Below, piece after piece: positions 6,712 through 33,233 of a stretch of DNA of 33,687 bases. Origin of the DNA: Polymyxa betae A26-41 (lineage: Eukaryota; Protista; Endomyxa: Phytomyxea); the NCBI GenBank assembly GCA_003693705.1, contig RBZT01000747.1:1-33687 (forward strand), written 5' to 3'. The translations under genes and the position numbers were made by a program. The notes below the pieces were generated by a model. That model was given only the letters and a program-made list of their open reading frames with translations, searched no databases and was not told where the DNA came from. Position 1 is the stretch's first letter. The number at the start of each line of letters is the position of its first letter.

Positions 6712-7663
6712 ATCCCGTGACCTATTTCAGCTAGGGTTAGGGTTGTACAGATGTAAAACTGATCGATCAATCATACTGTTCAACATAACATATTTGTCAA
6801 TAGAGACTATTCTATAGACTGAGAATTCTTTAAGAATCGGATCTTTCGCTGTAAATTGTTTTTTTATAGCAATCGTATTCTTTGAAAAATCATTTTGCCA
6901 AAGCCCAGAAATCTTTTTCCTTTATAGCTGCTGCTGCTGTTGAAACTAGGTACCATATGCAGAAACACTTTCAAAGGAACACAGAATTCTTTTCTAAACA
7001 GACGTACAGGAATATGAAGGAAGATTGGGACTACCGTAGCGGACCTTTCTACTTTGATTGTTTGGTAGTGCCAATATAACAAAGATTATAGGGGTCGATG
7101 CCGGGCTGAGAGTTCCAAACACAAAGCCAAAATGCAGATTTCATCGATACAACCATTTTCGAGTCTCGAGTTTGAAAATTGGCTCTCTCCCTTGCGCAGT
7201 TATAACGCATGAAAGTCGTTTGGAGAGCTGAGAGGTTGCCGATTGTCAAAGAGACAAAAAGTTTAAAGTGCGCTCAGATTTTCCACGGTACTTTTTGTCG
7301 ACAGTCATTTTGTATCAAAAACAGTATTTTGCGGACGCAGAGTTTGTGAGCATATTTTGAGTAGGAGAAAGTCGCAGCTTCCGTGAGCGCGCAAAATTCT
7401 TCGGCAGTTGATGCAACACCCATGACCTCGTAAAGCCACCGCCTCCTGTCGCAGGCATGCAGCTGCCTCTTCCGAAACATTCCTCCTCGCATGCTGGAAA
7501 TTGATGCTCGCAAAATTTTACGCAAATTGTGGAACTACATACAAAATGAAATTGTCGCTGTTGACAGAGTTATGGTGCTTCTGAATCCAAGCAGTCTGAT
7601 GATTGCTAAATTCGTTCAGTTCAATGATACATTTTATTGTAAGAATCCGGAAGCAAAAATAAC

Positions 7664-7750
7664 AACCCACGGCGGGGCTCGAACCCGCAGCCTTGTGATT
7701 GACTCCCAATTTGTAAGAGTCCCACGCTCTACCGATTGAGCTACGCGGGC
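7664..7750 (-). tRNA. tRNA-Lys (CTT) with a 14-nt intron at position 37/38 (7700-7713)
   Basis: Reverse complement reads GCCCGCG TA GCTC AATCGGTA GAGC G TGGGA CT CTT A [CAAATTGGGAGTCA] A TCACA AGGCT GCGGG TTCGAGC CCCGC CGTGGGT T. The intron GGGAGTC can pair with the anticodon region. TTTTT follows downstream. Confidence 0.9.
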
Positions 7751-8608
7751 TGATGATGTTACGTTACAACTTCATCGTTCCAACAAACGTAGACCTTGAC
7801 GAGGGAAGTTCTTTCTGGATTCGATGGGATTGCAATTTTGTTCGCACCTTTTGTTGATAATCAAGGCTCTCGAAATTTCGATTATCTTGAAGCTTAACGT
7901 ACGAAATTTCACACATTGTAGGAGTATGGTTGCCGTAGTTACAATCGCTTAAAGCTTCTGTGCTGATTGATTTGAATCCCAAATAGACGGACTATAAATC
8001 AAAACTGCACTTTTTTCGCAGAATTTTGTGATGTACAAACTGTAACTTGTTGCTGAGCTGATTTCTGCGGGATTCCTCCGAAATGCAACGCAATCGCGAC
8101 GTGAAAGCTTTAATGAAATGTAAACTGGTACAACAGTATCTCTATAGAGACTGCAAAGTCGACGTAAAATATTCCCAAAGATCTGTTAAATTCTTCATCT
8201 GATGAATACCGCACGTTCGACGGTCGTCCACGTTCTGTAGAGACTCTTGCGTCTCAAAAATTGAACGCTCAGGCCTGTGCCCTCACGTCCCAGCTTTTGG
8301 ATCTGAGCTACGACAAGTTGCCTAATTGTCTCGTTGGCGATTTTAGCGTCGATAACGAGTGCCCTGACTACAACTTCTTAGACAGAATCGTTTCCGATTT
8401 GCAGGTTCTATGATCTCATCGTGATGGTAATGACAGAAAATCGCTCCATTTGCGACAGAAAACGCACTTGAAGGATGCAGTTCAGATATAAGGTTGCTTA
8501 CGTTTAGAAAATGCTAAACCCTAGCTGGCACCATATATTTGCTTTTCAATGAATGATTGATATATTTGAACTAAGAACGCAGAACATCGAGACTGACTCC
8601 GACTCCGA

Positions 8609-13761: not shown

Positions 13762-16029
13762 CTGGAGCAGGCACTGCGCGAACCCGCGAAGGCGAATCCG
13801 CCGTCGTCGATTGCTGGAACGACGGTCGTCGCTATGGGACGCCGACGACGCGCTGGGCACGCGCCGGATCGACGCCGGCATCGGAGGCACGCGAACACCG
13901 AACTCGCCGCTCACCGACGGCACTAAAGCGGAGATTGCCGGAGGCTCGATCTCCGCCACTGAATGAATTGCGTCTAACAAGGGGCGGGTTCTTCATCGAA
14001 TATCATCCATGTAAACCCTAAAACCCTAACATTAACGACGCGTTGGAAAACTTTGGTTCATATTCTTGTTATTTTTTTTATCTTTCTTCAAATGATTGTG
14101 TAATTTCAGCCATTTTCGATCCTGAGACTTTTATCTAAAGAATAGAAGCATCGCTAAAACAATCAAAAATCAGGTTGGATCATCTCAGAAAGCGTTAATC
14201 GCCTTTATGATTTTAGAACGGCGCGAGGCCTTCGCCTGTGTCACAACATCCCGAGGCGAATATATCGCCCAGTTCGCCAACTACAAAAGCCATCCCTTTC
14301 TGATTCGCTTCTCTGCTTTCAATTATCATCTTGGTATTTTGTTGATAGAAGACCGTTTCTTCGGTGTTGTCATTTTGAATTCAAGCAATGAAGAAATCCA
14401 GTAGCAATTCTTCCAACTCATGCGTCAACTCGTTTGCTATAAACATTCAGGGTTAAGGTTCATGGCCGCGATGGTTACGTATGGTTATGTCCTCGTTATC
14501 AAACAATGCATTATGGGACCTCACGAACTTGATCCCCTCAGCTGGTATTTCACCCAATGACGAATTGGTTTTTCAAATGGCTTTGTCGATTTTGCAGTTA
14601 GCCTCGAAAGAGCTGCCGATGGGGTGGTATTACTTCAATCACGCACAAATCGATGACGGTGATGCGAAAATTCCAAAGTTTCGTTCGTGTTCGAGCTGGC
14701 GACCCTCGTTGACGAGGCTCCCTTATTTCAAACGCTACGCCAACCGCCCAGGGCTGAACGAGCTCGTTGGGGATGGTATTGGTTTGGTGAGGAGAAGTTT
14801 TTCTTGCAGTTTCAGATAACGATCGCTTTAAGGCCATCCATAGCTGTTGATATCCCTGTCATGATGGCAAGCTCTGACACGACTTTAGCTAACCCGAACA
14901 GCGCTGTTTGCAAAAGATCTCTTATAAGACCTTCAAGTATTAGAGACGTTTCGGACGCACTCTTCCGTTCGGTTTAGACTTTAGAGTTCCACATTTGTTA
15001 ATATGATTTTCTAGTCTGTTTCATCTGCACGCACTAATCTGAATGGAAAACCCAGTTCCGTTAAAGGGGGGGATTACGGAATAGGTTCTTCCGTTCCGTT
15101 TGCGCTCACACTGTAACAGAACGGAAAAGGGAAAGTGCGTCAAAAAAGTCTCTATTTTTACAGCGCAGTTGGAGGTTTGGAGACACTATGTGCTCTAACA
15201 CTTATTGGGAGGAACAGTAGAGGAGTCCGTTACTGTCGCTACTGCACAGATCTGCCTCTCTGTCACCCTTACTGAATGGAAAACATCAGCGACGCTACAG
15301 CAATATTTCTAGTTAGGGATGAACGGAATGGAAATCCTCTTCACAATATTGATGGAGCTACACCAAATTAAGACTTACGATGATAAGTGATCATTTACGT
15401 GTGGATTTGTGGCCAAAGACAATGTTTTCCAATTACAATAGAGACATAGATTGAGTATCAAGGCTGACCTTCAAGCTTGAACGTTTTTACCAGAACTTAA
15501 CATAGACTGTATTCGGATTAGAATGCATTTATCTTTTCTTATTGGTATACTAGGTGCAGAGATTCTATGCACAGAGTTAAAGCTTCAATATTATCTCTCC
15601 AGTTATATGGAGATTATCCATAACTTGTATCAAGCTGGAGTCTGATTAACAAGCTCTCTATTTAAGGCATTCAAACTGTTTATGAGACAATTTCTGATAC
15701 TGAAAGATAATGAGGAATTGGAGAGCGTTCTGTGATCGAGACCTGAGAGCAGAAGGGCGGCCATCATGGTAGACCTTGAGAAGGAGGCCGCCGATAATAA
15801 CACAAAAGAGGACAGCGCCGAGTATGAAGATGATCGTACCTAATGAACAGGTTAAACCCTAATCCTGTCAATATCAAGTTCCTGACAATCGGACTTGGAG
15901 TGTTCAAGTTCAAATTGCGAACTTTTCGAGTGATGGTTGGGCGAGTACGCCTTATCATTGGAGTTCTGTGCGGCAGCAGATTCCGATGAAGACATGAAGT
16001 CGGAATTCGGATCTTGAGTGTGTAATAGA

Positions 16030-16737
16030 TTATTTATGAGCCGTTTCAGGAGACATTCGCTGCTCTTCCTGATTGTCAGATACGGAGTCCGAAGACTCCG
16101 AAGACGAAGGCAAAGATTCAACAGGTTCCGCATCTTGAACGTTACTCGAATCCTGCGTCTGCATTACAATTTTATCCAATTGCGCCATTTGTTGCTTGAA
16201 ATTGGGGAGATGAGGTCGTATAACATCGAAATAGAACTGATACAATTGATGGTCTTCAGGAGAAGAACGCTTCCAGTGATTGAAACAAACGCTTAAAAGG
16301 GTATTACTATAGTGATCAGCAACGTCAACAATTAGACGGAAGAATGGCATCTCGGCAACCATTCAAAGCAATCGTATCGAAGTTTTTTGATCCATCATCA
16401 AACATCTTCCAGATCGCGGACAGAAAAGAGATCGGACTAGAACGGATTGCATGCAAATCAATGGAGACCGGAGACACGCCCGCGCGCCATTCAACAGCGC
16501 TGTATTTTGCATCTCGTCGACCAAAGTTTTCATAATGTCAACGGGTTTGAAGGCCAAATAAGGAATGATTTCTTGAAGCCGAACATTGGAAAAACGCGAG
16601 AGCAGGAAGAAATCCTGGTATGAGAATCGCAATCCAAGACGCAGCAGATTCAGCAAGGGATCTTGATCGCATTGTTCCCACCATTCGTTGGAGACCGTTG
16701 ACGGAATCTTTCGTCGACGCGCTCGAGCCATTGCCAT
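16030..16737 (-). pseudogene. 5'-truncated, disrupted paralogue of the F-box/helical-domain family at 20586-22930
   Basis: WWEQCDQDPLLNLLRLGLRFSYQDFF...CLRSPL matches WWKHSDQDLLQTLLRVGLRFSYDEYF...CLRSPL. EMPFF...ADHYSNTLLSV...WKRS...FDVIRP matches ELPFF...ADQYGCTLLSV...WKRS...FDIIRP. TGA at 16365-16363, probable frameshift near 16460, and no signal peptide or F-box upstream. Confidence 0.8.
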
Positions 16738-22930: not shown

Positions 22931-23966
22931 TTCCATCGTGATTCCGCAATTTGTTTGCGGGCTTTATTTTGCAGTCTGACGGCCTTTTGTAGTGAAGTTT
23001 CATACAAGTAAGTCGTACTGGATTCACGATTCCCATGCTGTATTCGTCATGATCATGCCCTCAGGAAGGAACCGCTTTGTTAGAAGCAGAACATTTTGCC
23101 TGCGAAGAATCCTACAAAGCTGTCTAAGACGTGCCTTGAAGCCGCTCTCGTATCCAGAAACGAAGATGCCGCCGCCAGTTCTGCGCAAGTAAGAACAATT
23201 TGAAACAGCAGCTAGCGCGAGTTCCTGATTCTCAAATGCAGAGCACGAATTGAGCAGCCTGCGGTAGATGATTAGGTAGAATATTCATCGTGTTCTAGAA
23301 GTTAGCAGCAATTTGGATTTTTTGATTGATTTTTAAGACCTCTTTCTTCAAATTCCGGAGTTCTCGCTGTTAAATCGTCACGTTGATTGCATCATATGCA
23401 ATAAAGAGCAGCGACATCAATGCAATTGCAAACTATATGGACATCGGTAATAGGTAGTACTGGCAGTGAGTGATCCACTTAGTCCATTTTCGTCACGATC
23501 AAAGATATTATGATACTTACACGATACACTCGGAGACAATATGGAAAATATGTCTGAGCAGCGACATTCCGAAAACCGTAATAGAGCAGCGAGACTGTTC
23601 GGGCAGCCCTATCTCGAACATCAATCTCAGCCGTGATTCTACGCTGCGGACCCCGACAATCCCGGACACTCCGCCAGTGCGACTAAAGATCCGAGACGGA
23701 TCGTAACCATCAGCATAATCGGGACAAGGATCTTGTACGCAAGCAGGCAGAGAGCGAGGTGGGTCAACGCAAACGCAAAACCAGTACGACGCACTCGATA
23801 ATCGAACTTCGTCATCGGATCGTATTTACTGGATTGAAGCCGAGTTCAGCGAGAGACAGCCAAAAGGGTCCCCGGATTTGAGGATGCTGATTGATTTTAA
23901 ACCAGGACTGGACCGATGGAATCGGATGATGATTGACATAGTAAGCGAACACAAAATCGAAAAAGA

Positions 23967-24040
23967 CGTCAAAGGTGGGACTCGAACCCACAACCTCTCG
24001 GTTAACAGCCGAACGCGCTGACCAGTTGCGCCACTCAGAC
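23967..24040 (-). tRNA. tRNA-Asn (GTT)
   Basis: Reverse complement reads GTCTGAG TG GCGC AACTGGTCA GCGC G TTCGG CT GTT AA CCGAG AGGTT GTGGG TTCGAGT CCCAC CTTTGAC G, followed by TCTTTTT. Confidence 0.93.
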
Positions 24041-24106
24041 ATACGCTGATACTGTTAGACGGGAGAGGGTTTGGAACTGGAATGGGTTTGAAGAAGTGTT
24101 TTATTT

Positions 24107-24108: not shown

Positions 24109-25640
24109 GAAGACAATGCTTCCGGTTGAATTAGCCTGAGTCAACGCTATTGATATCTCGAGATTGATCTAACAGCGCTCATATGCTAATAGATACTCTC
24201 CACCCTCGCTATGCGGAGTGCGCCGCCCACCAACTCTAATTGCAAGAATAGTTTCTATCCGATTGAAAGCGCGGTCCCCAATTGAGAAGTCAATTTTCTG
24301 TTTGTGCTCTTCAGCTAGCTTTGACCAGTAAGAAAACTCTGTATTAACCTTCTGAAATAGGACAGCAGAGCCAAAACAAAAATGGGTATTGCGCACGGTG
24401 CAGTTGCTCTAAGACTCTGAATACGGACATCAAGTCTTGAACTCACAGCTGAATCGTTACAAGAAACGCAAATGCAGCATGTGTAAGAAAAACGGGCACA
24501 TAAAATGATTTTGTTATGGTGTCGTTATGGTAGAGGAGAATGACTACGGTCTTGACTTGTGAGTCCTCCGACCTTTTCCAGGAGGTCTTTCAGGATGCTG
24601 TAAAGTGTGTCAACTTCTTGGAGCTTGTCGTCCTCGGATAGTATGCGAATGATGTCCGCCGTGATTCGCTCACTACGATCTGGTATTTGAAAAATAGCAC
24701 AGCACCACCTGTTTAGTGATACCAATTGTCTCACATCTTCTCATCTCTATAGAACCTACACCGCCTAGAACTTACAACATTTAGTTGCGGTCCGAATTAT
24801 AGCGAACTAGCCAATTGAGATGTCAATTTTGAGACGTTTGTTGAAGCTCTTCATCCGCTTAGAAAACTTGGGTATTGTCATGCAACCGCGGAACTCGTTA
24901 CTGTAGGTTTAGTCGACTTGACGTTTCAATCAAGACCTTGGCAGCATTGATCGGACATGACGATGGCTCCGGCAGATAGTTCATGGACGTCGCCGTCCGT
25001 TAATCAAGTCAAGGAGGCTAGCATCGCATATCACGCTAAATCAGACCGTGCGCAATTGCAGCCGTGATCAGGGCCAGGATACGAGGAGAGATATCGTCGC
25101 TGGAACGCTGAAGACGACGAGGACGAGAGATGCGACCGTTGTCAGCTGATTTTGAAAGTACGAATGGAAAGTTTTTTCATTCATCCCTCAAAAAAAAACT
25201 GAACAGAACGTTATTCACCGCTCTAAAAAAAATCCGAAACGCTCTAAGCTATTTCAAGTGCAGAATCTCTTGGAAATTTTTATCTATGGATTCGTCTAAA
25301 TGAAATATAAACCTCAATATACACGGATGGGTTTCGCTCGATCCTTTCCCTAAACCCTAAATCCGAATCATTGTACATCAAGCAATGCTCTAAAACAGTT
25401 GATTTGGGTTGTCGGAAAAGCTCGATCATGAGACTCCGCTGTTTACAGCTCGCGATAACATGGCTTTATTCCAGATCACAGGCTTGAACGATCCAATATA
25501 TCGATACCACTTTAGAGCGGTGAATCCCAATTCTAGAGCTGTGAAACTCCAATTAGCGCAACAATATCATCCTCTTTTTTGAGCGCCGCTCCAGCCAAAA
25601 TTTTAGCCGGAAATTGATGGTTAAAAGCGCCTGGATAGTT

Positions 25641-27924: not shown

Positions 27925-28528
27925 AAAGCCGACCAAAGTCCCAATTTGTTTTCAAAAAAAAGTTGAACTGTTAACAGCCTATTATGAGTGTGAATACACA
28001 CGATCTATTATAATAGTGGGCACAGGATTGAGAGGACCAGGAGCCACGGACTTTTTGCGAAGCTTAAGACGAGAAGGAGCGTTGATTCGAAAACGGCGTT
28101 GACCGAATTTTGCTACCTTGTTTAGCCTTGGTTATCGTTTACATAAGAATATTGTTCACAAAATCTTATATTCAGCAGCGAATTTTAAAAGCGGCTAAAA
28201 GTTGCTTCTATCAGAAATTGCTTCCAATGACCTGACAATGCCAATTCCAACAACTGGTTACAGCCCTCAATTTCCTAACAGCAACTTTAAAACGAAAATT
28301 GGGACACATTTCTGATTTTATCCTTCACAAATTCCGTTTCGCAATGAGTATTAGGGTTAGGGTTTGAATTGCAAGCGCCAGTAAGCAGTTCGTTTTGAGC
28401 CCAGCGAAACCGTTGTTAATGTTACATTGGTTGATGAAGCTGAGGTAACGTTACATGGCTGGCAGTCGGTCATGGTCGTCAGTCCGGATGCGATCGAACA
28501 GTACCACGCTCAACACGTCGTCGTCGTC

Positions 28529-29248
28529 ATGCTGGCCCGACGCCGGCTCTGCGGAATGCGGCTCTGGCTGGGGCTGTACGCCGTGCTTCTGATGGCAGTG
28601 CCGAGGACGGCGGCCCGGATCACGATGAACTGGGTCCTGGACCCCATCGCCCTTATCAGCCCCAACGAAATGTTCGCCACCCGAATCGGCGGCGTCGTAC
28701 CGGCCCAGGCCGTGCTGAACCTGGCCTGCCCCAGTAACAACATCATCTCGACGATCAAGTTCGCGTCGTGGGGGCGGCCTTCGGGCCAGTTCCCGGACTT
28801 TGTCCGAACGAATTGTTCGGCGACGAACAGCAGCGCGATTGCGTCCGCCGCCTGTGTCGGGTCGGCGTCGTGTGCGTTGAACGCGTCGGCGGCGGTGTTC
28901 GGAGATCCGTGCCCCGGGGAGGCCAAGCAGCTCGCCGTGTTGGCGTTGTGTTCGCCGCTGATTGGGAGCGCGGCCTCCGAGGAGAATACCGCCCATCTGC
29001 AGTGTCCGGGCAGCCAGCTCATGTCCGTGATCACGTTCGCGTCGTTCGGGAGGCCGAGCGGCAGCTTTCCCAACTACCAGACGACGTCGTGTGCGTCGTC
29101 GTCCAGTCATCAAGTGGTGGCGGCCTCCTGTCTCGGACGGAATTCGTGCTCGGTCCTGTCCAATATTGGCGTGTTTGGTGATCCGTGTTCGGGATTGGGA
29201 AAATGGCTCTATATAGTGGCGTTATGCACAGATCTCGTGTTTGCATAG
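28529..29248 (+). CDS. Secreted protein with two tandem SUEL-type (galactose/rhamnose-binding) lectin domains
   Basis: Hydrophobic leader LWLGLYAVLLMAVPRTAA. Two copies of L.CP....S.I.FAS.GRPSG.FP......C....S......C.G..SC.......FGDPC.G..K.L...ALC. The start could be 28472, 28529 or 28556. Confidence 0.88.
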   Translation: MLARRRLCGMRLWLGLYAVLLMAVPRTAARITMNWVLDPIALISPNEMFATRIGGVVPAQAVLNLACPSNNIISTIKFASWGRPSGQFPDFVRTNCSATNSSAIASAACVGSASCALNASAAVFGDPCPGEAKQLAVLALCSPLIGSAASEENTAHLQCPGSQLMSVITFASFGRPSGSFPNYQTTSCASSSSHQVVAASCLGRNSCSVLSNIGVFGDPCSGLGKWLYIVALCTDLVFA

Positions 29249-29803
29249 CTGTAAACCCTAAACCCTAATATATTGTCAGATTTGTGATTTGTGGAAGAAG
29301 ACTGCCTTGACGAGTACATTTGACGTAAAGCCCAAAGTTGTGATCTTCTGATTTTGTTTGAATGGCGCAGTATTTTTGACACAAACTTCGAACGGAGGCC
29401 GAGTGAGAGGCCAGCATCGTTCCAGTCGCGCATTTTTCATCTTTTCATAGCGCACTTTTTCGCATTTCACATTATGGCAGAGTGTTCTCGCTGTTTCTCA
29501 GAAAAGATGCGGGTTTCTCAAATGTTCTGCTGCTATGAAAAATATCCAATTCCGAAAGCCATCAAGATGGTTCTGATCAGATTAGCTTCCAAGCAAAAGA
29601 TCGGCAAAAGGCAGTTCACTATTTGAACGAAACATCTCGGATCAAAGAGAGAATCGAGAGAGAAGTTCTGCGCGAAAACTCTCGGCTATTCTGTGACATT
29701 AAAAAGCGGGCAAAGATTACAGTATGCGCCAAGAGGCGTTCTTAAAATTTCAACTTTTATAAAAAAACAACTGTACAAGAACATCGAAATAGATTCAGCA
29801 ACG

Positions 29804-31032
29804 TCAATGTTGAAGGAATCTGAAGAATCGTACAAAGACGAAGATGCTGAGCAGAGAGAAGGCGATGGCCATGCTCAGCGAGATCCATTTGATAAGGCCG
29901 CATGTGCCGTATGCGAACAGGAATTGGGACACGCCTAAGCCAACTGGAAGCAGAGCTTGTACGATTCGATACCAGAATTGACTGCGGAGGCTGCCGGCGG
30001 TATCCACCGTAATCAAATGAAGCGGAAGAGAGAGCAAACCCTCAGCCAACCCACACCACCTGAGAAGCAATTTCAGGGGAATTCTGAAGACGAAAACGAG
30101 GTACACTTTGTGAAGTTCTTTAATTTAAGAAAAAAAAAGGACTGAAAACGCCATAAATGGTCATTTCATACCAAACGAGAGTGAAAATCGTGCCAGAAAT
30201 TCATGAAAAAAGGCAAATCAAGTAGTCAGATAGAACGATCTACCAGTTTAGAGAAAGCGCCAAAGCGAAAGGAAGCCATGAATATGAGCTCGTAACAATG
30301 CAGGCTATATCGAATAGTTTAAAAGTTTGAAAGAAAAATTGTTTTTTGGCAGGATGTAAAATCGAGTCCCAGACAGAGCTCAATAAGAAGATATAATGAG
30401 AATGATTTTAAACAAAAAAAACATTCAAGAATTCATAGGCCAGGAAATCTTCAGAAAAAAAACACCAAAAAATGATTTCAACAAGATTTCAATTACCAGA
30501 AAAGACTGGGTAAACAACGACGGAGTTTCTGGCTGAAGCCGATTCCAGCAATGATCATATAAGTGACGAGGAACAGTGAGTAGAGCATCGCCAATGAATA
30601 GTTGCGCCAGTCTGGGGGGATGACTGCGAAACATAGAAGGTCAGCCAGCGTATGGTAACATAAAGGGTTGCGAACTTGACTTGAAAACCGGGGCCTCTGC
30701 CGACCGGGTCCGACCTGGCAGCAGCTCGAAATCGGAATGTTCATCAGCGGAATCGCGAGCGCGGTTCGACCCGATCTCCACGTCTACGGTAACATTAACG
30801 GTAACATAAACATGAAACGTGGCGGCGGACCCAGAGAGTAGCCGTGCGTATCGGGCGAGGCGGAAGGCGCCGGGATCGGTGCGCGGCTGCGGCCTCGTGG
30901 AGGCCCATACGAAGTGGATGCCTCATCGCTGCCTGTGAAACGTTAACGGACTTGGTAACGTTGGCAGCAACGTTACCGACCAGGAGTGGCGACAGCGACG
31001 GTCAAGGTCAGGAGCAGAAGCAACGGCTGCAT
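29804..31032 (-). CDS. Orphan signal-peptide multi-pass membrane protein, paralogue 2 (exons 31032-30981, 30932-30831, 30783-30676, 30623-30497, 30059-29804; 214 aa)
   Basis: Leader MQPLLLLLTLTVAVATPG. Introns of 48, 47, 52 and 437 nt have consistent phases. IPPDWRNYSLAMLY and GSLRSQ...SQFLFA...C..IK...SLSMAIAF match the 25641-26456 gene. Confidence 0.8.
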
Positions 31033-31530
31033 CGTCAGATTCAGGTGTGGCGACGCCGCGGGACGGAATGGGCGCAGCCCACCCACTGGTGAGTGGTCGA
31101 GGGTTTCGTGACTGGGACGCCTGAACTCTGTCAGGTTCAGGTCGGCGGAGCGGCCTTTGTCGATCGCCAAAAACGCTGATTTCAGTGTCGACGGCATCAG
31201 CCGGGCGCTGCCTGCGCACAGAGACCAGCTCGCCATTGACCAATATTGGTCAAAACCGATCCGTTTTGCATAACACAGTATGCTAATAAGGCAAGAAGAG
31301 TTTAACAGAGATCGGGATGTAACAGCCGAACGATTTTTTTTAAATATTTCACAGTTTTCTTCTCAGCATTGCTCGTTGTAGATCACATCCGTACAATGCC
31401 TTCTAGACAGCAACCTGCTTGCTCACATAAAACGACCTATCTGTCCGTAATGAAAATGTTGCCCAATAAACATCGAATAATCAGAATTTTCAACTGAAAT
31501 TGTATTTGCTGTTACATGACAGACAGACAG

Positions 31531-33233
31531 TTAGTGTGATGCGGGCGCGAGTTTGTCCACGATGGGATCGGGTTCCGTGTGCTTCCGAGCCACGGACTGG
31601 AACTTGGCGTTGGTGGCCGGTAACCTAACATTCAGAATGGCCGCGTACCTGCTGGTGAACAAATCTTTGCTCTTGGCCATTTTGGTCACGAATGCGCCCA
31701 GATTGAACCCGAACAGTAACGAGACGCCGGTTTTCGGTCCGACCGGGACAATCATGGTCGAATAGCCCGCGGGCTTGTACGGCTTCATGGCGTTACCGTT
31801 TTGTAACGCGATCAAGTTTTTCGCTAACAGCGAGGCGTGATTGCCGGCGTACGCCGCCAGACGGTCTTCGTCGGCCTGGATACAGTCGCCGATGGCGAAG
31901 ACGTTGTTCTGGCCCTCGACCTTGAAAGGGTTAGGGTTTAGGGTTTAGGGTTTCCAATCCGACCTGGAAGAATTCGTTCACTTTCAGTCGCCCTTTGTCG
32001 TCGAGCGCGAACTCTTTCGCGTATGACGAGTTGTTCATCTGTTGACAGTTAGGGTTTTAGGGTTTGTCGGCCACCTGGCTGACCTTGGTGACACCGATGC
32101 AGACGAAAACCAGGTCGGCTTCGAATTGTTCGCCGTTGGATAGACGGACGTTGGTGGGGCCTTTAATGACGGACGTCCCATTCCAGTCATCTATATAAGC
32201 GACCACGTTCGTCTTGACCTGAATGCCTTGTTGCTGGACGCAACGCTCCAGATTCGATATGAACTTCTCCGGCTTGTTCGACTGACATAATCGGGGAAGT
32301 TTGGAGATTATCGTCACCTATCTCGCAAGTTTAGATTATTTCTTCAAAATCGAATTTGAAAGAATATAGCAGTTCGTATTCGAAGTGACCAAAAAACAAT
32401 TCCGGGAAGAGAAAAATTTCTTGCAGAATATCGAATCAAAGCATCACAAGTTGAAGATAATTCATTCAAGAAAGCTAAAAAGCAACTAAAAACCATCATA
32501 AAATTCGCAAACAAATTGACAAGTTTAAACAGGCCAATTTGACCAATTCTTTGAGTATCAACTGACTTTTATAAAACAAACAGTGATAATTTCTATGAGA
32601 AAACAGCTGGCCCAATAAGGTTTTAAAGAGTCTGAAATGCAAGAAAGTTTGTCATTGCAGTAATCGATGGACACAACTTTTTGTGAACAAAAATATCGTA
32701 TCGAAGTTTACCTCTTTATCGGGATGCTGAGCCTTGATCTCGCCGGCAAATTCGCAGGAGACGGGCCCGCCTCCGACCACCACCACCCGACGTCCAGCCC
32801 GGCCCAGGTCGTCGACGGCCTGGGCGTACTCGCGACGGGCCTGCGGACCGTTCGTGGCCTGGATCTGGCACGGGAAGGCGAACATCGACCCGGTCGCGAT
32901 CACCACGTAATCGAACGTGACGGCTTGGTCGCGGCCAGCGACCTAGAGTCATGAAAACCCTAACCCTAAAACCCTAAAACCCTAACCGACCTTAATCGCC
33001 GTCCCTGTGATACTGGTAACTTCGGCCTGGATGAAAGTCCCTTTGCGCAACAAGTCCGTGTACGGCAGGACGATATTGTCGACGAATCCCGGTACGACCG
33101 AGGCGCGCATTGCGCCGACGTTATGCAGGAAATAGTCCTTCCGATCGATCAGGTAAACTTGGAAATGCGATTCCAGGGCCTTGGCCAGGGCGATCCCGCC
33201 GTACCCGCCCCCGACAATGGCGACCGTCTTCAT
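31531..33233 (-). CDS. AMID/FSP1 (AIFM2)-like FAD/NAD(P)H oxidoreductase, 5 exons (33233-32991, 32942-32712, 32317-32084, 32038-31964, 31920-31531; 390 aa)
   Basis: Motifs VAIVGGGYGG, FDYVVIATGS, VVVGGGPVSCEFAGEI, ADLVFVCIG and GRLKVNEFFQVEGQNNVFAIGDC. All exon lengths are multiples of 3 and all introns are GT-AG. Confidence 0.92.
31928..31953 (+). repeat. Telomere-type repeat tract in intron 4 of the AMID-like gene
   Basis: GGGTTAGGGTTTAGGGTTTAGGGTTT. Confidence 0.95.
32048..32065 (+). repeat. Telomere-type repeat tract in intron 3 of the AMID-like gene
   Basis: GTTAGGGTTTTAGGGTTT. Confidence 0.92.
32954..32987 (-). repeat. Telomere-type repeat tract in intron 1 of the AMID-like gene
   Basis: Minus strand reads GGTTAGGGTTTTAGGGTTTTAGGGTTAGGGTTTT. 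Confidence 0.95.

What the first reader, a model, noticed from the sequence alone, without database searches (positions are those of the whole stretch)
31921..32990. Spliceosomal introns built from telomeric repeats: 3 of 4 introns in one conserved gene
Seen: the AMID/FSP1-like frame is restored only by removing these introns. Intron 1 (32990-32943, 48 nt) is GTCGG-TTAGGG-TTTTAGGG-TTTTAGGG-TTAGGG-TTTT-CATGACTCTAG. Intron 3 (32083-32039, 45 nt) contains AAACCCTAAAACCCTAAC. Intron 4 (31963-31921, 43 nt) is GTCGGATTGG-AAACCCT-AAACCCT-AAACCCT-AACCCT-TTCAAG. Both orientations occur relative to the transcript, and unit length varies (T2-4AGGG). Known: TTAGGG, TTTAGGG and TTTTAGGG are eukaryotic telomere repeats, and telomerase can add repeats at internal breaks. 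Inference: either an intron-creation route through telomeric-repeat insertion at repaired breaks, or introns co-opted as docking sites for telomere-repeat-binding Myb proteins.
Basis: partly seen in the sequence, partly recalled or inferred. Interest (0 to 1): 0.92.

Follow-up and report, generated by a model that had tools for sequence, protein, structure and literature searches.

The report
Telomere repeats colonising tiny old introns
In the sugar-beet root parasite Polymyxa betae, short runs of its own telomere repeat have replaced the inside of many very small introns; most of the introns tested are older than the repeats, so the repeats did not create them, but one intron may be a real case of telomerase helping to make a new intron.

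Summary
Observation confirmed. The window is a Polymyxa betae contig. The AMID/FSP1-like gene has four phase-0 introns; three (43-48 nt) are 42-71% telomeric repeat, with the same mixed T2-4AG3 units as this genome's chromosome ends. Exons tile two homologues without gaps; RNA junctions could not be checked.

Intron creation fails for introns 1 and 3: Plasmodiophora brassicae has repeat-free introns at exactly those positions. Two tract-bearing tubulin introns give the same result. About 700 such tracts are scattered genome-wide (80x chance), mostly outside short introns but about 7x denser inside them, in both orientations, without lengthening the intron.

Best reading: short interstitial telomeric sequences written by telomerase at repaired breaks, replacing old intron interiors; retention as Myb-binding sites is the main rival. 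Intron 4 is the exception: absent from P. brassicae and flanked by a 9/10 direct repeat, a fair candidate (about 35%) for gain with telomerase filler. Intron-enriched ITSs are known in Caenorhabditis. The scan noted this pattern before elsewhere in this genome (unchecked notes).

The parts
32991..33233 (-). Exon 1 of AMID/FSP1-like FAD/NAD(P) oxidoreductase (81 aa, start codon)
   Evidence: Pfam Pyr_redox; aligns to P0153 4-84
32943..32990 (-). Intron 1, 48 nt, phase 0; position shared with P. brassicae (after aa 84)
32954..32987 (-). Telomeric tract in intron 1: 34 nt, 4 units (T2, T4, T4, T2), G-rich strand in the transcript; only 14 nt of the intron are not tract
32712..32942 (-). Exon 2 (77 aa)
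   Evidence: Pfam Pyr_redox_2 93-161; P0153 85-162
32318..32711 (-). Intron 2, 394 nt, AT-rich, no telomeric tract; position shared with P. brassicae (after aa 162)
32084..32317 (-). Exon 3 (78 aa)
   Evidence: Pfam Pyr_redox_2 169-238; P0153 163-238
32039..32083 (-). Intron 3, 45 nt, phase 0; position shared with P. brassicae (after aa 238)
32047..32065 (-). Telomeric tract in intron 3: 19 nt, 2 units, C-rich strand in the transcript; supplies the only YTRAY branch-point match (A 11 nt from the 3' end)
31964..32038 (-). Exon 4 (25 aa)
   Evidence: P0153 239-263, P0001 243-267
31921..31963 (-). Intron 4, 43 nt, phase 0; absent from P. brassicae; candidate gained intron
31927..31953 (-). Telomeric tract in intron 4: 27 nt, C-rich strand in the transcript; supplies the only YTRAY match (A 11 nt from the 3' end)
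31960..31969 (-). Left copy of the 10-bp junction-spanning direct repeat of intron 4 (TTCCAG|GTCG)
31917..31926 (-). Right copy of the direct repeat (TTCAAG|GTCG), 9/10 identical
31531..31920 (-). Exon 5 (129 aa plus stop)
   Evidence: best hit P0001 268-370, 52%; P0153 264-399
14013..14029 (-). Two-unit tract in a predicted 66-nt intron (13974-14039) of the kinase gene
   Evidence: ab initio only
28351..28365 (+). Two-unit tract about 115 nt upstream of the SUEL-lectin gene (not intronic by prediction)
29253..29268 (-). Two-unit tract just past the stop codon of the lectin gene (not intronic)
25348..25361 (-). Two-unit tract in intergenic DNA

Best explanation
The tracts are short interstitial telomeric sequences. 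At a double-strand break, telomerase adds two to four of its variable T2-4AG3 units to one end, a stretch of flanking DNA is lost, and the ends are rejoined. In exons this is purged; in the roughly 50-nt introns only products that keep donor, branch point, acceptor and the narrow size range survive, so the tract ends up replacing the interior of an old intron instead of lengthening it. In the C-rich orientation the T2 unit itself reads CTAAC and can act as branch point. Introns 1 and 3 are old introns colonised this way. Intron 4 is either the same with loss in P. brassicae (about 65%) or a new intron made by a staggered break at a proto-splice site with telomeric filler (about 35%). Shown: tract grammar equals telomere grammar, TERT present, intron age, unchanged length, both orientations. 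Inferred: telomerase authorship, break repair, branch-point use.
For: Contig-end arrays (C97, C125, C355, C371, C649, C665) mix T2, T3 and T4 units as the internal tracts do. TERT RNA-binding domain at C940, E 8.5e-13. 960 tandem matches versus 25 for the reversed control. Neighbouring units equal in length 9 of 24 times, as independent draws predict (36%), unlike slippage copies. Both orientations: 25 G-sense, 10 C-sense heptamers in short introns. Positions of introns 1-3 shared with repeat-free P. brassicae introns; two tubulin tract introns shared with repeat-free introns of a metagenomic relative. Tract introns are not longer (median 51 vs 49.5 nt, P 0.8), and removing the tract leaves 14-35 nt in 10 of 11, at or below the shortest tract-free introns, so sequence was replaced. 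One filled/empty pair: in a stop-containing paralogue (L007 near 8630) a 20-nt tract stands where the intact copy (L008) has 16 coding nt, between conserved flanks, with TAAC in register, the deletion-plus-in-register pattern of mammalian ITSs (PMC7215372). Middle units of internal tracts show substitutions at all positions including the G run, as neutral decay predicts.
Against: Neutral insertion under a tight size limit should make tracts rarer in short introns than in intergenic DNA, yet they are about 7x denser (15.5 vs 2.2 per 10 kb; P 2e-6); this needs a break bias towards introns or retention by selection, neither shown. C is enriched before TAGGGTT (49 of 100 vs about 20%) and G-strand 3' ends nearly always stop at GGG plus two or more T (42 of 46), both of which also fit a protein footprint. 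Only one filled/empty site, between paralogues about 50% identical in protein. The sample is 215 kb chosen for tract richness and the gene models are ab initio.
Confidence: 0.55

Rival explanations
1. Telo-box-like cis-elements: the tracts, whatever first wrote them, are kept by selection as clustered double-strand binding sites for TRF/TRB-type Myb proteins that set chromatin state or expression of the host gene; short introns are simply the free space inside genes. Compatible with a telomerase origin, as proposed for plant telo boxes.
For: Orientation-independent; 7x denser in short introns and 1.7x near gene ends than in distant intergenic DNA; YTAGGGTT bias even on tract-poor contigs, which resembles the TRF1/2 Myb half-site (own knowledge); several tracts per gene in AMID, AK7 and a divergent alpha-tubulin; 31 Myb-domain matches in the genome; TRF-like genes reported in unchecked notes; intronic ITSs mark silenced genes in C. 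elegans (PMC6800518).
Against: Clustering by gene is not significant (P 0.05 overall, 0.12 within loci). No 5' bias as in plants (PMC3022908). Orthologous introns in two relatives lack the motif. Tracts decay in the G run and occur in a pseudogene's former coding sequence. The C bias also follows from T-to-C decay. Binding was not testable and the Myb matches were not typed.
Confidence: 0.27
2. Telomerase-filled break repair is a general route of intron creation here: most tract introns were born as insertions into exons.
For: Intron 4 is missing in P. brassicae, which reads through YLQ|VE, and in an oomycete, a dictyostelid and a rotifer homologue. It has the best junction-spanning direct repeat of 111 short introns (9/10), the staggered-break footprint of Daphnia neointrons (PMC4202315). 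The C-rich unit provides a branch point. Unchecked notes report paralogue-specific tract introns.
Against: Four of five testable tract introns sit at positions shared with repeat-free relatives. Intron 4's repeat has P 0.10 given its own exon flanks, and 0.33 such cases are expected among 111 introns; old intron 1 also has a 6-bp repeat. P. brassicae has three introns that P. betae lacks, so loss is common; polarity is unknown. Most tracts are not intronic.
Confidence: 0.08
3. Telomerase-independent microsatellite growth: branch-point (CTAAC) or donor-like seeds expand by replication slippage and only resemble the telomere.
For: Splice signals resemble parts of the repeat; all five C-sense short introns have their only YTRAY inside the tract; would explain the intron enrichment.
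Against: Units within a tract are not copies of each other; the exact mixed telomere grammar is matched; G-sense tracts start anywhere from 2 to 55 nt after the donor; over half of tracts lie outside introns; control heptamers are not enriched (0-1 of 153 introns).
Confidence: 0.08
4. Artefact: host (sugar-beet) telomere reads or misassembly.
For: The assembly was binned from infected roots (PMC6328671).
Against: Tracts are 15-35 nt, sit inside cleanly bounded introns of genes whose best named homologue is P. brassicae, number in the hundreds with differing flanks, and use mixed T2-4 units; reads were 2 x 250 bp at 225x.
Confidence: 0.02

Closest known systems
Short interstitial telomeric sequences of mammals (Nergadze 2007 PMC2246262; Santagostino 2020 PMC7215372)
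   Same: Short tandem copies of the host telomere repeat at internal sites, both orientations, excluded from coding exons, one site with a deletion and in-register bases.
   Different: Only 2-4 units; about 700 in a 27-Mb genome; denser in short introns than random (human: 31% intronic, as expected by chance); the tract replaces most of a 45-nt intron and may supply the branch point.
Intron-enriched ITSs of Caenorhabditis (Frenk et al. 2019, PMC6800518)
   Same: Hundreds to a thousand telomere-type tracts, enriched in introns, depleted in exons, species-specific; authors already suggest a contribution of telomerase to intron evolution.
   Different: About twofold enrichment there; here about 7x versus intergenic DNA and in miniature introns whose length does not change; no chromatin or small-RNA data here.
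Plant telo boxes bound by TRB Myb proteins (Gaspin et al. 2010, PMC3022908)
   Same: Same core motif; proposed origin by non-processive telomerase at internal 3' ends; possible Myb docking.
   Different: Plant boxes are single units concentrated in 5' regions and not enriched in introns; here tandem mixed units, densest in internal short introns.
Introns gained by staggered double-strand-break repair (Daphnia, PMC4202315; review PMC3443670)
   Same: Intron 4: lineage-restricted, phase 0 at an AG|GT proto-splice site, 10-bp direct repeat spanning both junctions.
   Different: The filler is telomeric repeat (neither paper mentions telomeres). Introns 1 and 3 are not gains.
Introners (intron-generating transposons)
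   Same: Many short introns sharing a sequence feature.
   Different: No family of near-identical introns: only the tract is shared, flanks differ, most tested positions are old.

Membership tests
U2 spliceosomal intron | GT..AG ends, removal restores a frame collinear with homologues | tested here: met
U2 spliceosomal intron | Junction seen in RNA | not testable with these tools
Short interstitial telomeric sequence | Tandem units identical to the organism's own telomere repeat | tested here: met
   contig-end arrays mix T2, T3, T4 units
Short interstitial telomeric sequence | Internal location, far above chance | tested here: met
   960 vs 25 control matches; P about 5e-6 per intron
Short interstitial telomeric sequence | Telomerase present | tested here: met
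   PF12009 over cut-off at G000:C940; gene presence only
Short interstitial telomeric sequence | Empty orthologous site showing one-step insertion with in-register bases | tested here: inconclusive
   orthologous introns are repeat-free but too diverged to align; one paralogue pair fits
Plant-type telo box | Core octamer of the C-rich strand | tested here: met
Plant-type telo box | Concentrated in promoters and 5' UTRs | tested here: not met
   3.2 per 10 kb within 250 nt of gene ends vs 15.5 in short introns; ab initio models, biased sample
Plant-type telo box | Bound by TRF/TRB-type Myb proteins | not testable with these tools
   31 untyped Myb matches
Plant-type telo box | Association with site II or TEF elements | not tested
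   none
Intron gained by break repair | Position absent in relatives: introns 1 and 3 | tested here: not met
   present and repeat-free in P. brassicae
Intron gained by break repair | Position absent in relatives: intron 4 | tested here: inconclusive
   absent in P. brassicae and three distant homologues; no second plasmodiophorid gene to polarise gain versus loss
Intron gained by break repair | Direct repeat spanning both junctions (intron 4) | tested here: inconclusive
   9/10, top of 111 introns; P 0.003 per random intron, 0.10 given its own flanks
Intron gained by break repair | Presence/absence polymorphism in populations | not testable with these tools
   no other isolate on record; no close relative in the metagenome scan
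Introner | Many near-identical introns at unrelated positions | tested here: not met
   no intron-to-intron blastn hits in 215 kb; genome-wide lists differ outside the tract

The most novel reading that the evidence does not exclude
Telomerase acts as a filler polymerase in break repair inside P. betae genes and sometimes creates a new spliceosomal intron: a staggered break duplicates an AG|GT proto-splice site, telomerase writes the spacer, and the C-rich repeat supplies a ready branch point. Intron 4 would be such a case, and the same process overwrites existing introns. This would be an intron-gain route with a named template.
Probability: 0.28. Interest if true: 0.85.

Novelty: new variant of a known kind. 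Interest (0 to 1): 0.55.

Why it matters
The source of sequence in newly gained introns is mostly unknown. A compact genome with hundreds of recognisable telomere-type tracts in 45-55-nt introns gives a traceable marker: comparing P. betae with close relatives can count how many tracts entered old introns and how many arrived with a new intron. Even without gain, it shows the interior and perhaps the branch point of minimal introns being overwritten by telomeric repeat at constant length, and offers a test of whether telomere-binding proteins act inside genes in a crop-virus vector.

Tried and rejected
The spliced protein was not joined for any search; exons were searched one by one by reference. 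Metagenome scan for the gene in close relatives: only distant, mostly intronless homologues. No genomic record for P0001 or for exon 1 of this gene in other isolates; the contig of tubulin relative P0262 had no DNA. No synteny between the window and the P. brassicae locus. The P. brassicae control (21.6 kb, zero heptamers) is too small to show the tracts are absent genome-wide there. Patterns show intron-like examples, but their reversed control does not test donor association, so I did not use them as an enrichment test. Gene-level clustering not significant. Introner, slippage and host-contamination readings rejected as above. Ten paper searches found no report of this feature in plasmodiophorids or of telomeric filler in gained introns; the library lacks most subscription papers, including the fuller P. 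betae genome paper as far as I could see.

Full report
Source. The window is the whole of contig C214 of a 27,085,814-base, 1,001-contig assembly. This matches the published Polymyxa betae draft (1,001 contigs, 27,085,946 bp, PMC6328671), and the best named homologue of the gene is from Plasmodiophora brassicae. The identification rests on that match, not on a label.

Gene and introns. The minus-strand gene has five exons (33233-32991, 32942-32712, 32317-32084, 32038-31964, 31920-31531; 390 codons) and four phase-0 GT..AG introns of 48, 394, 45 and 43 nt. Exons 1-3 match Pfam pyridine nucleotide-disulphide oxidoreductase profiles, and homologues are annotated as ferroptosis suppressor protein 1 / AIF-2-like. 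Each exon aligned alone ends one residue before the next begins on both P0001 and P0153, which is strong evidence for all four introns. RNA confirmation was not possible.

The tracts are real and telomeric. They fill 71%, 42% and 63% of introns 1, 3 and 4; shuffles give P of 2e-5 to 6e-5 each. Long arrays at or near the ends of at least six contigs (C97, C125, C355, C371, C649, C665) mix T2, T3 and T4 units, the grammar of the internal tracts (37, 39 and 17 inner runs of 2, 3 and 4 T). P. brassicae uses T4AG3 (PMC11191646). A TERT RNA-binding domain is present.

They are genome-wide, not special to this gene. A two-unit pattern has 960 matches against 25 for its reversed control; allowing for overlaps and true telomeres, roughly 700 separate tracts (my estimate). 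They are uneven: 5 of 72 lie beyond 50 kb into a contig against 25 of 83 control sites (P 2e-4), so small contigs are tract-rich. I trained a simple gene finder with an order-0 intron model, blind to the repeat, on 215 kb chosen for tract richness; it recovered introns 1, 3 and 4. Of 46 tandem tracts, 12 fall in short introns, 7 in long introns, 2 in exons and 25 outside genes: 15.5, 3.3, 0.3 and 2.2 per 10 kb (short intron versus intergenic P 2e-6). The heptamer occurs in 19 of 153 predicted short introns (one of them a false call on the C97 telomere), control heptamers in 0-1. A rough genome-wide figure is a few hundred introns, of the order of 1%. Both orientations occur, G-sense about twice as often (P 0.02). 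Clustering by gene is not significant.

Age of the introns, the decisive test. The P. brassicae orthologue has introns after residues 84, 162 and 238, all phase 0 and repeat-free: exactly introns 1, 2 and 3. It lacks intron 4 and has three introns that P. betae lacks. In a second gene, a divergent alpha-tubulin beside HAUS4 (L015), one intron with a clear tract and one with a degenerate tract sit where an unnamed, syntenic metagenomic relative has repeat-free introns (one donor there reads CT, probably an error). So four of five testable tract introns pre-date their tracts, which refutes creation as the general route.

How tracts entered. Tract-bearing short introns are no longer than others (median 51 vs 49.5 nt), and without the tract most would fall at or below the shortest seen; intron 1 keeps only 14 other bases. 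Sequence was replaced, not just added. Adjacent units are not copies of each other, which argues against slippage and for a variable template. A stop-containing paralogue in L007 has a 20-nt tract where the intact copy in L008 has 16 coding bases, between matching flanks and with four bases in register: one case, on a diverged alignment, of the pattern known from mammalian ITSs (PMC7215372). Middle units show substitutions at all positions. I therefore favour telomerase addition at repaired breaks with loss of flanking DNA, filtered by splicing constraints (0.55). In all five C-sense short introns the only YTRAY match lies in the tract, 11-22 nt from the 3' end, near the peak for tract-free introns (12-19 nt); branch-point use is inferred, and any T2 unit gives this match automatically.

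What this does not explain. The excess in short introns, the C before the heptamer (49 of 100) and the fixed G-strand 3' end also fit selected binding sites for TRF/TRB-type Myb proteins (0.27). The genome has 31 Myb-domain matches, untyped. The two readings can both be true, as proposed for plant telo boxes (PMC3022908).

Intron 4. It is absent from P. brassicae and from oomycete, dictyostelid and rotifer homologues, and has the best junction-spanning direct repeat among 111 short introns, 9 of 10 bases. A staggered break at a proto-splice site filled with 33 bases, 27 of them telomeric, would give exactly this, as in Daphnia neointrons (PMC4202315). But the repeat has P 0.10 given its exon flanks, and loss in P. 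brassicae is not excluded. I put gain at about 35% for this intron.

Comparison and verdict. It works like, and meets the testable criteria of, short interstitial telomeric sequences; enrichment of such tracts in introns is already published for Caenorhabditis (PMC6800518). New here are the miniature host introns, replacement at constant length, possible branch-point supply and one candidate gain; I found no paper on this in plasmodiophorids. Other first-stage notes in this genome describe the same pattern, including paralogue-specific cases that I could not fetch; they are leads, not support. Novelty: new variant of a known kind. Interest 0.55; 0.85 if telomerase-filled intron gain is shown (probability about 0.28).

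Noticed in passing
window:33409-33622: 29-bp tandem repeat, 7.4 copies at 97% identity, about 180 nt upstream of the AMID-like start codon, near the contig end.
   Followed up: no
window:2003-2076, 7663-7751, 23965-24041: tRNA-Glu(TTC), tRNA-Arg(TCT, 89 nt, probably with an intron) and tRNA-Asn(GTT) genes.
   Followed up: no
window:8609-14061 (-): Multi-exon protein kinase gene (about 17 predicted introns) with apparent EF-hand-like and PH-like N-terminal parts by eye; C-terminal kinase piece confirmed by Pfam.
   Followed up: partly
window:20586-22930 (+) and 16016-16737 (-): Family of related genes, one with an N-terminal signal-peptide-like stretch, internal repeats and no Pfam match; look like secreted proteins of unknown function.
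   Followed up: no
window:27094-27924 (+), 28472-29248 (+): Single-exon BTB/POZ gene and a gene with two SUEL lectin domains, the latter with a telomeric tract on each side.
   Followed up: partly
window:25641-26456 and 29804-31236 (-): Two paralogous multi-exon membrane-protein-like genes, about 38% identical.
   Followed up: no
L015:1342-1923 / P0316: A protein annotated as Beta vulgaris BVRB_040690 on a 561-bp contig is 100% identical to this genome's HAUS4 exon: probable Polymyxa contamination of the beet assembly.
   Followed up: partly
L015:2349-6548 (-): AK7-like gene (Dpy-30 motif) with tracts in three introns, followed by a divergent alpha-tubulin (about 43% to canonical ones) with a tract in its upstream region; tubulin-HAUS4 adjacency is kept in a metagenomic relative.
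   Followed up: partly
L009:292 and L010:5861: The two exonic tracts are in duplicated sequences (79% identical) and may encode Pro-Asn repeats on the opposite strand.
   Followed up: no
G000 contigs C1, C8, C12, C49, C50: Large contigs are tract-poor and small contigs tract-rich, suggesting a two-compartment or subtelomeric distribution; the P. brassicae orthologue lies about 107 kb from a chromosome end.
   Followed up: partly
G000:C853:63313-63588: The only SSU rRNA match in the assembly is a weak 276-nt piece below the cut-off; the rDNA seems not to be assembled.
   Followed up: no
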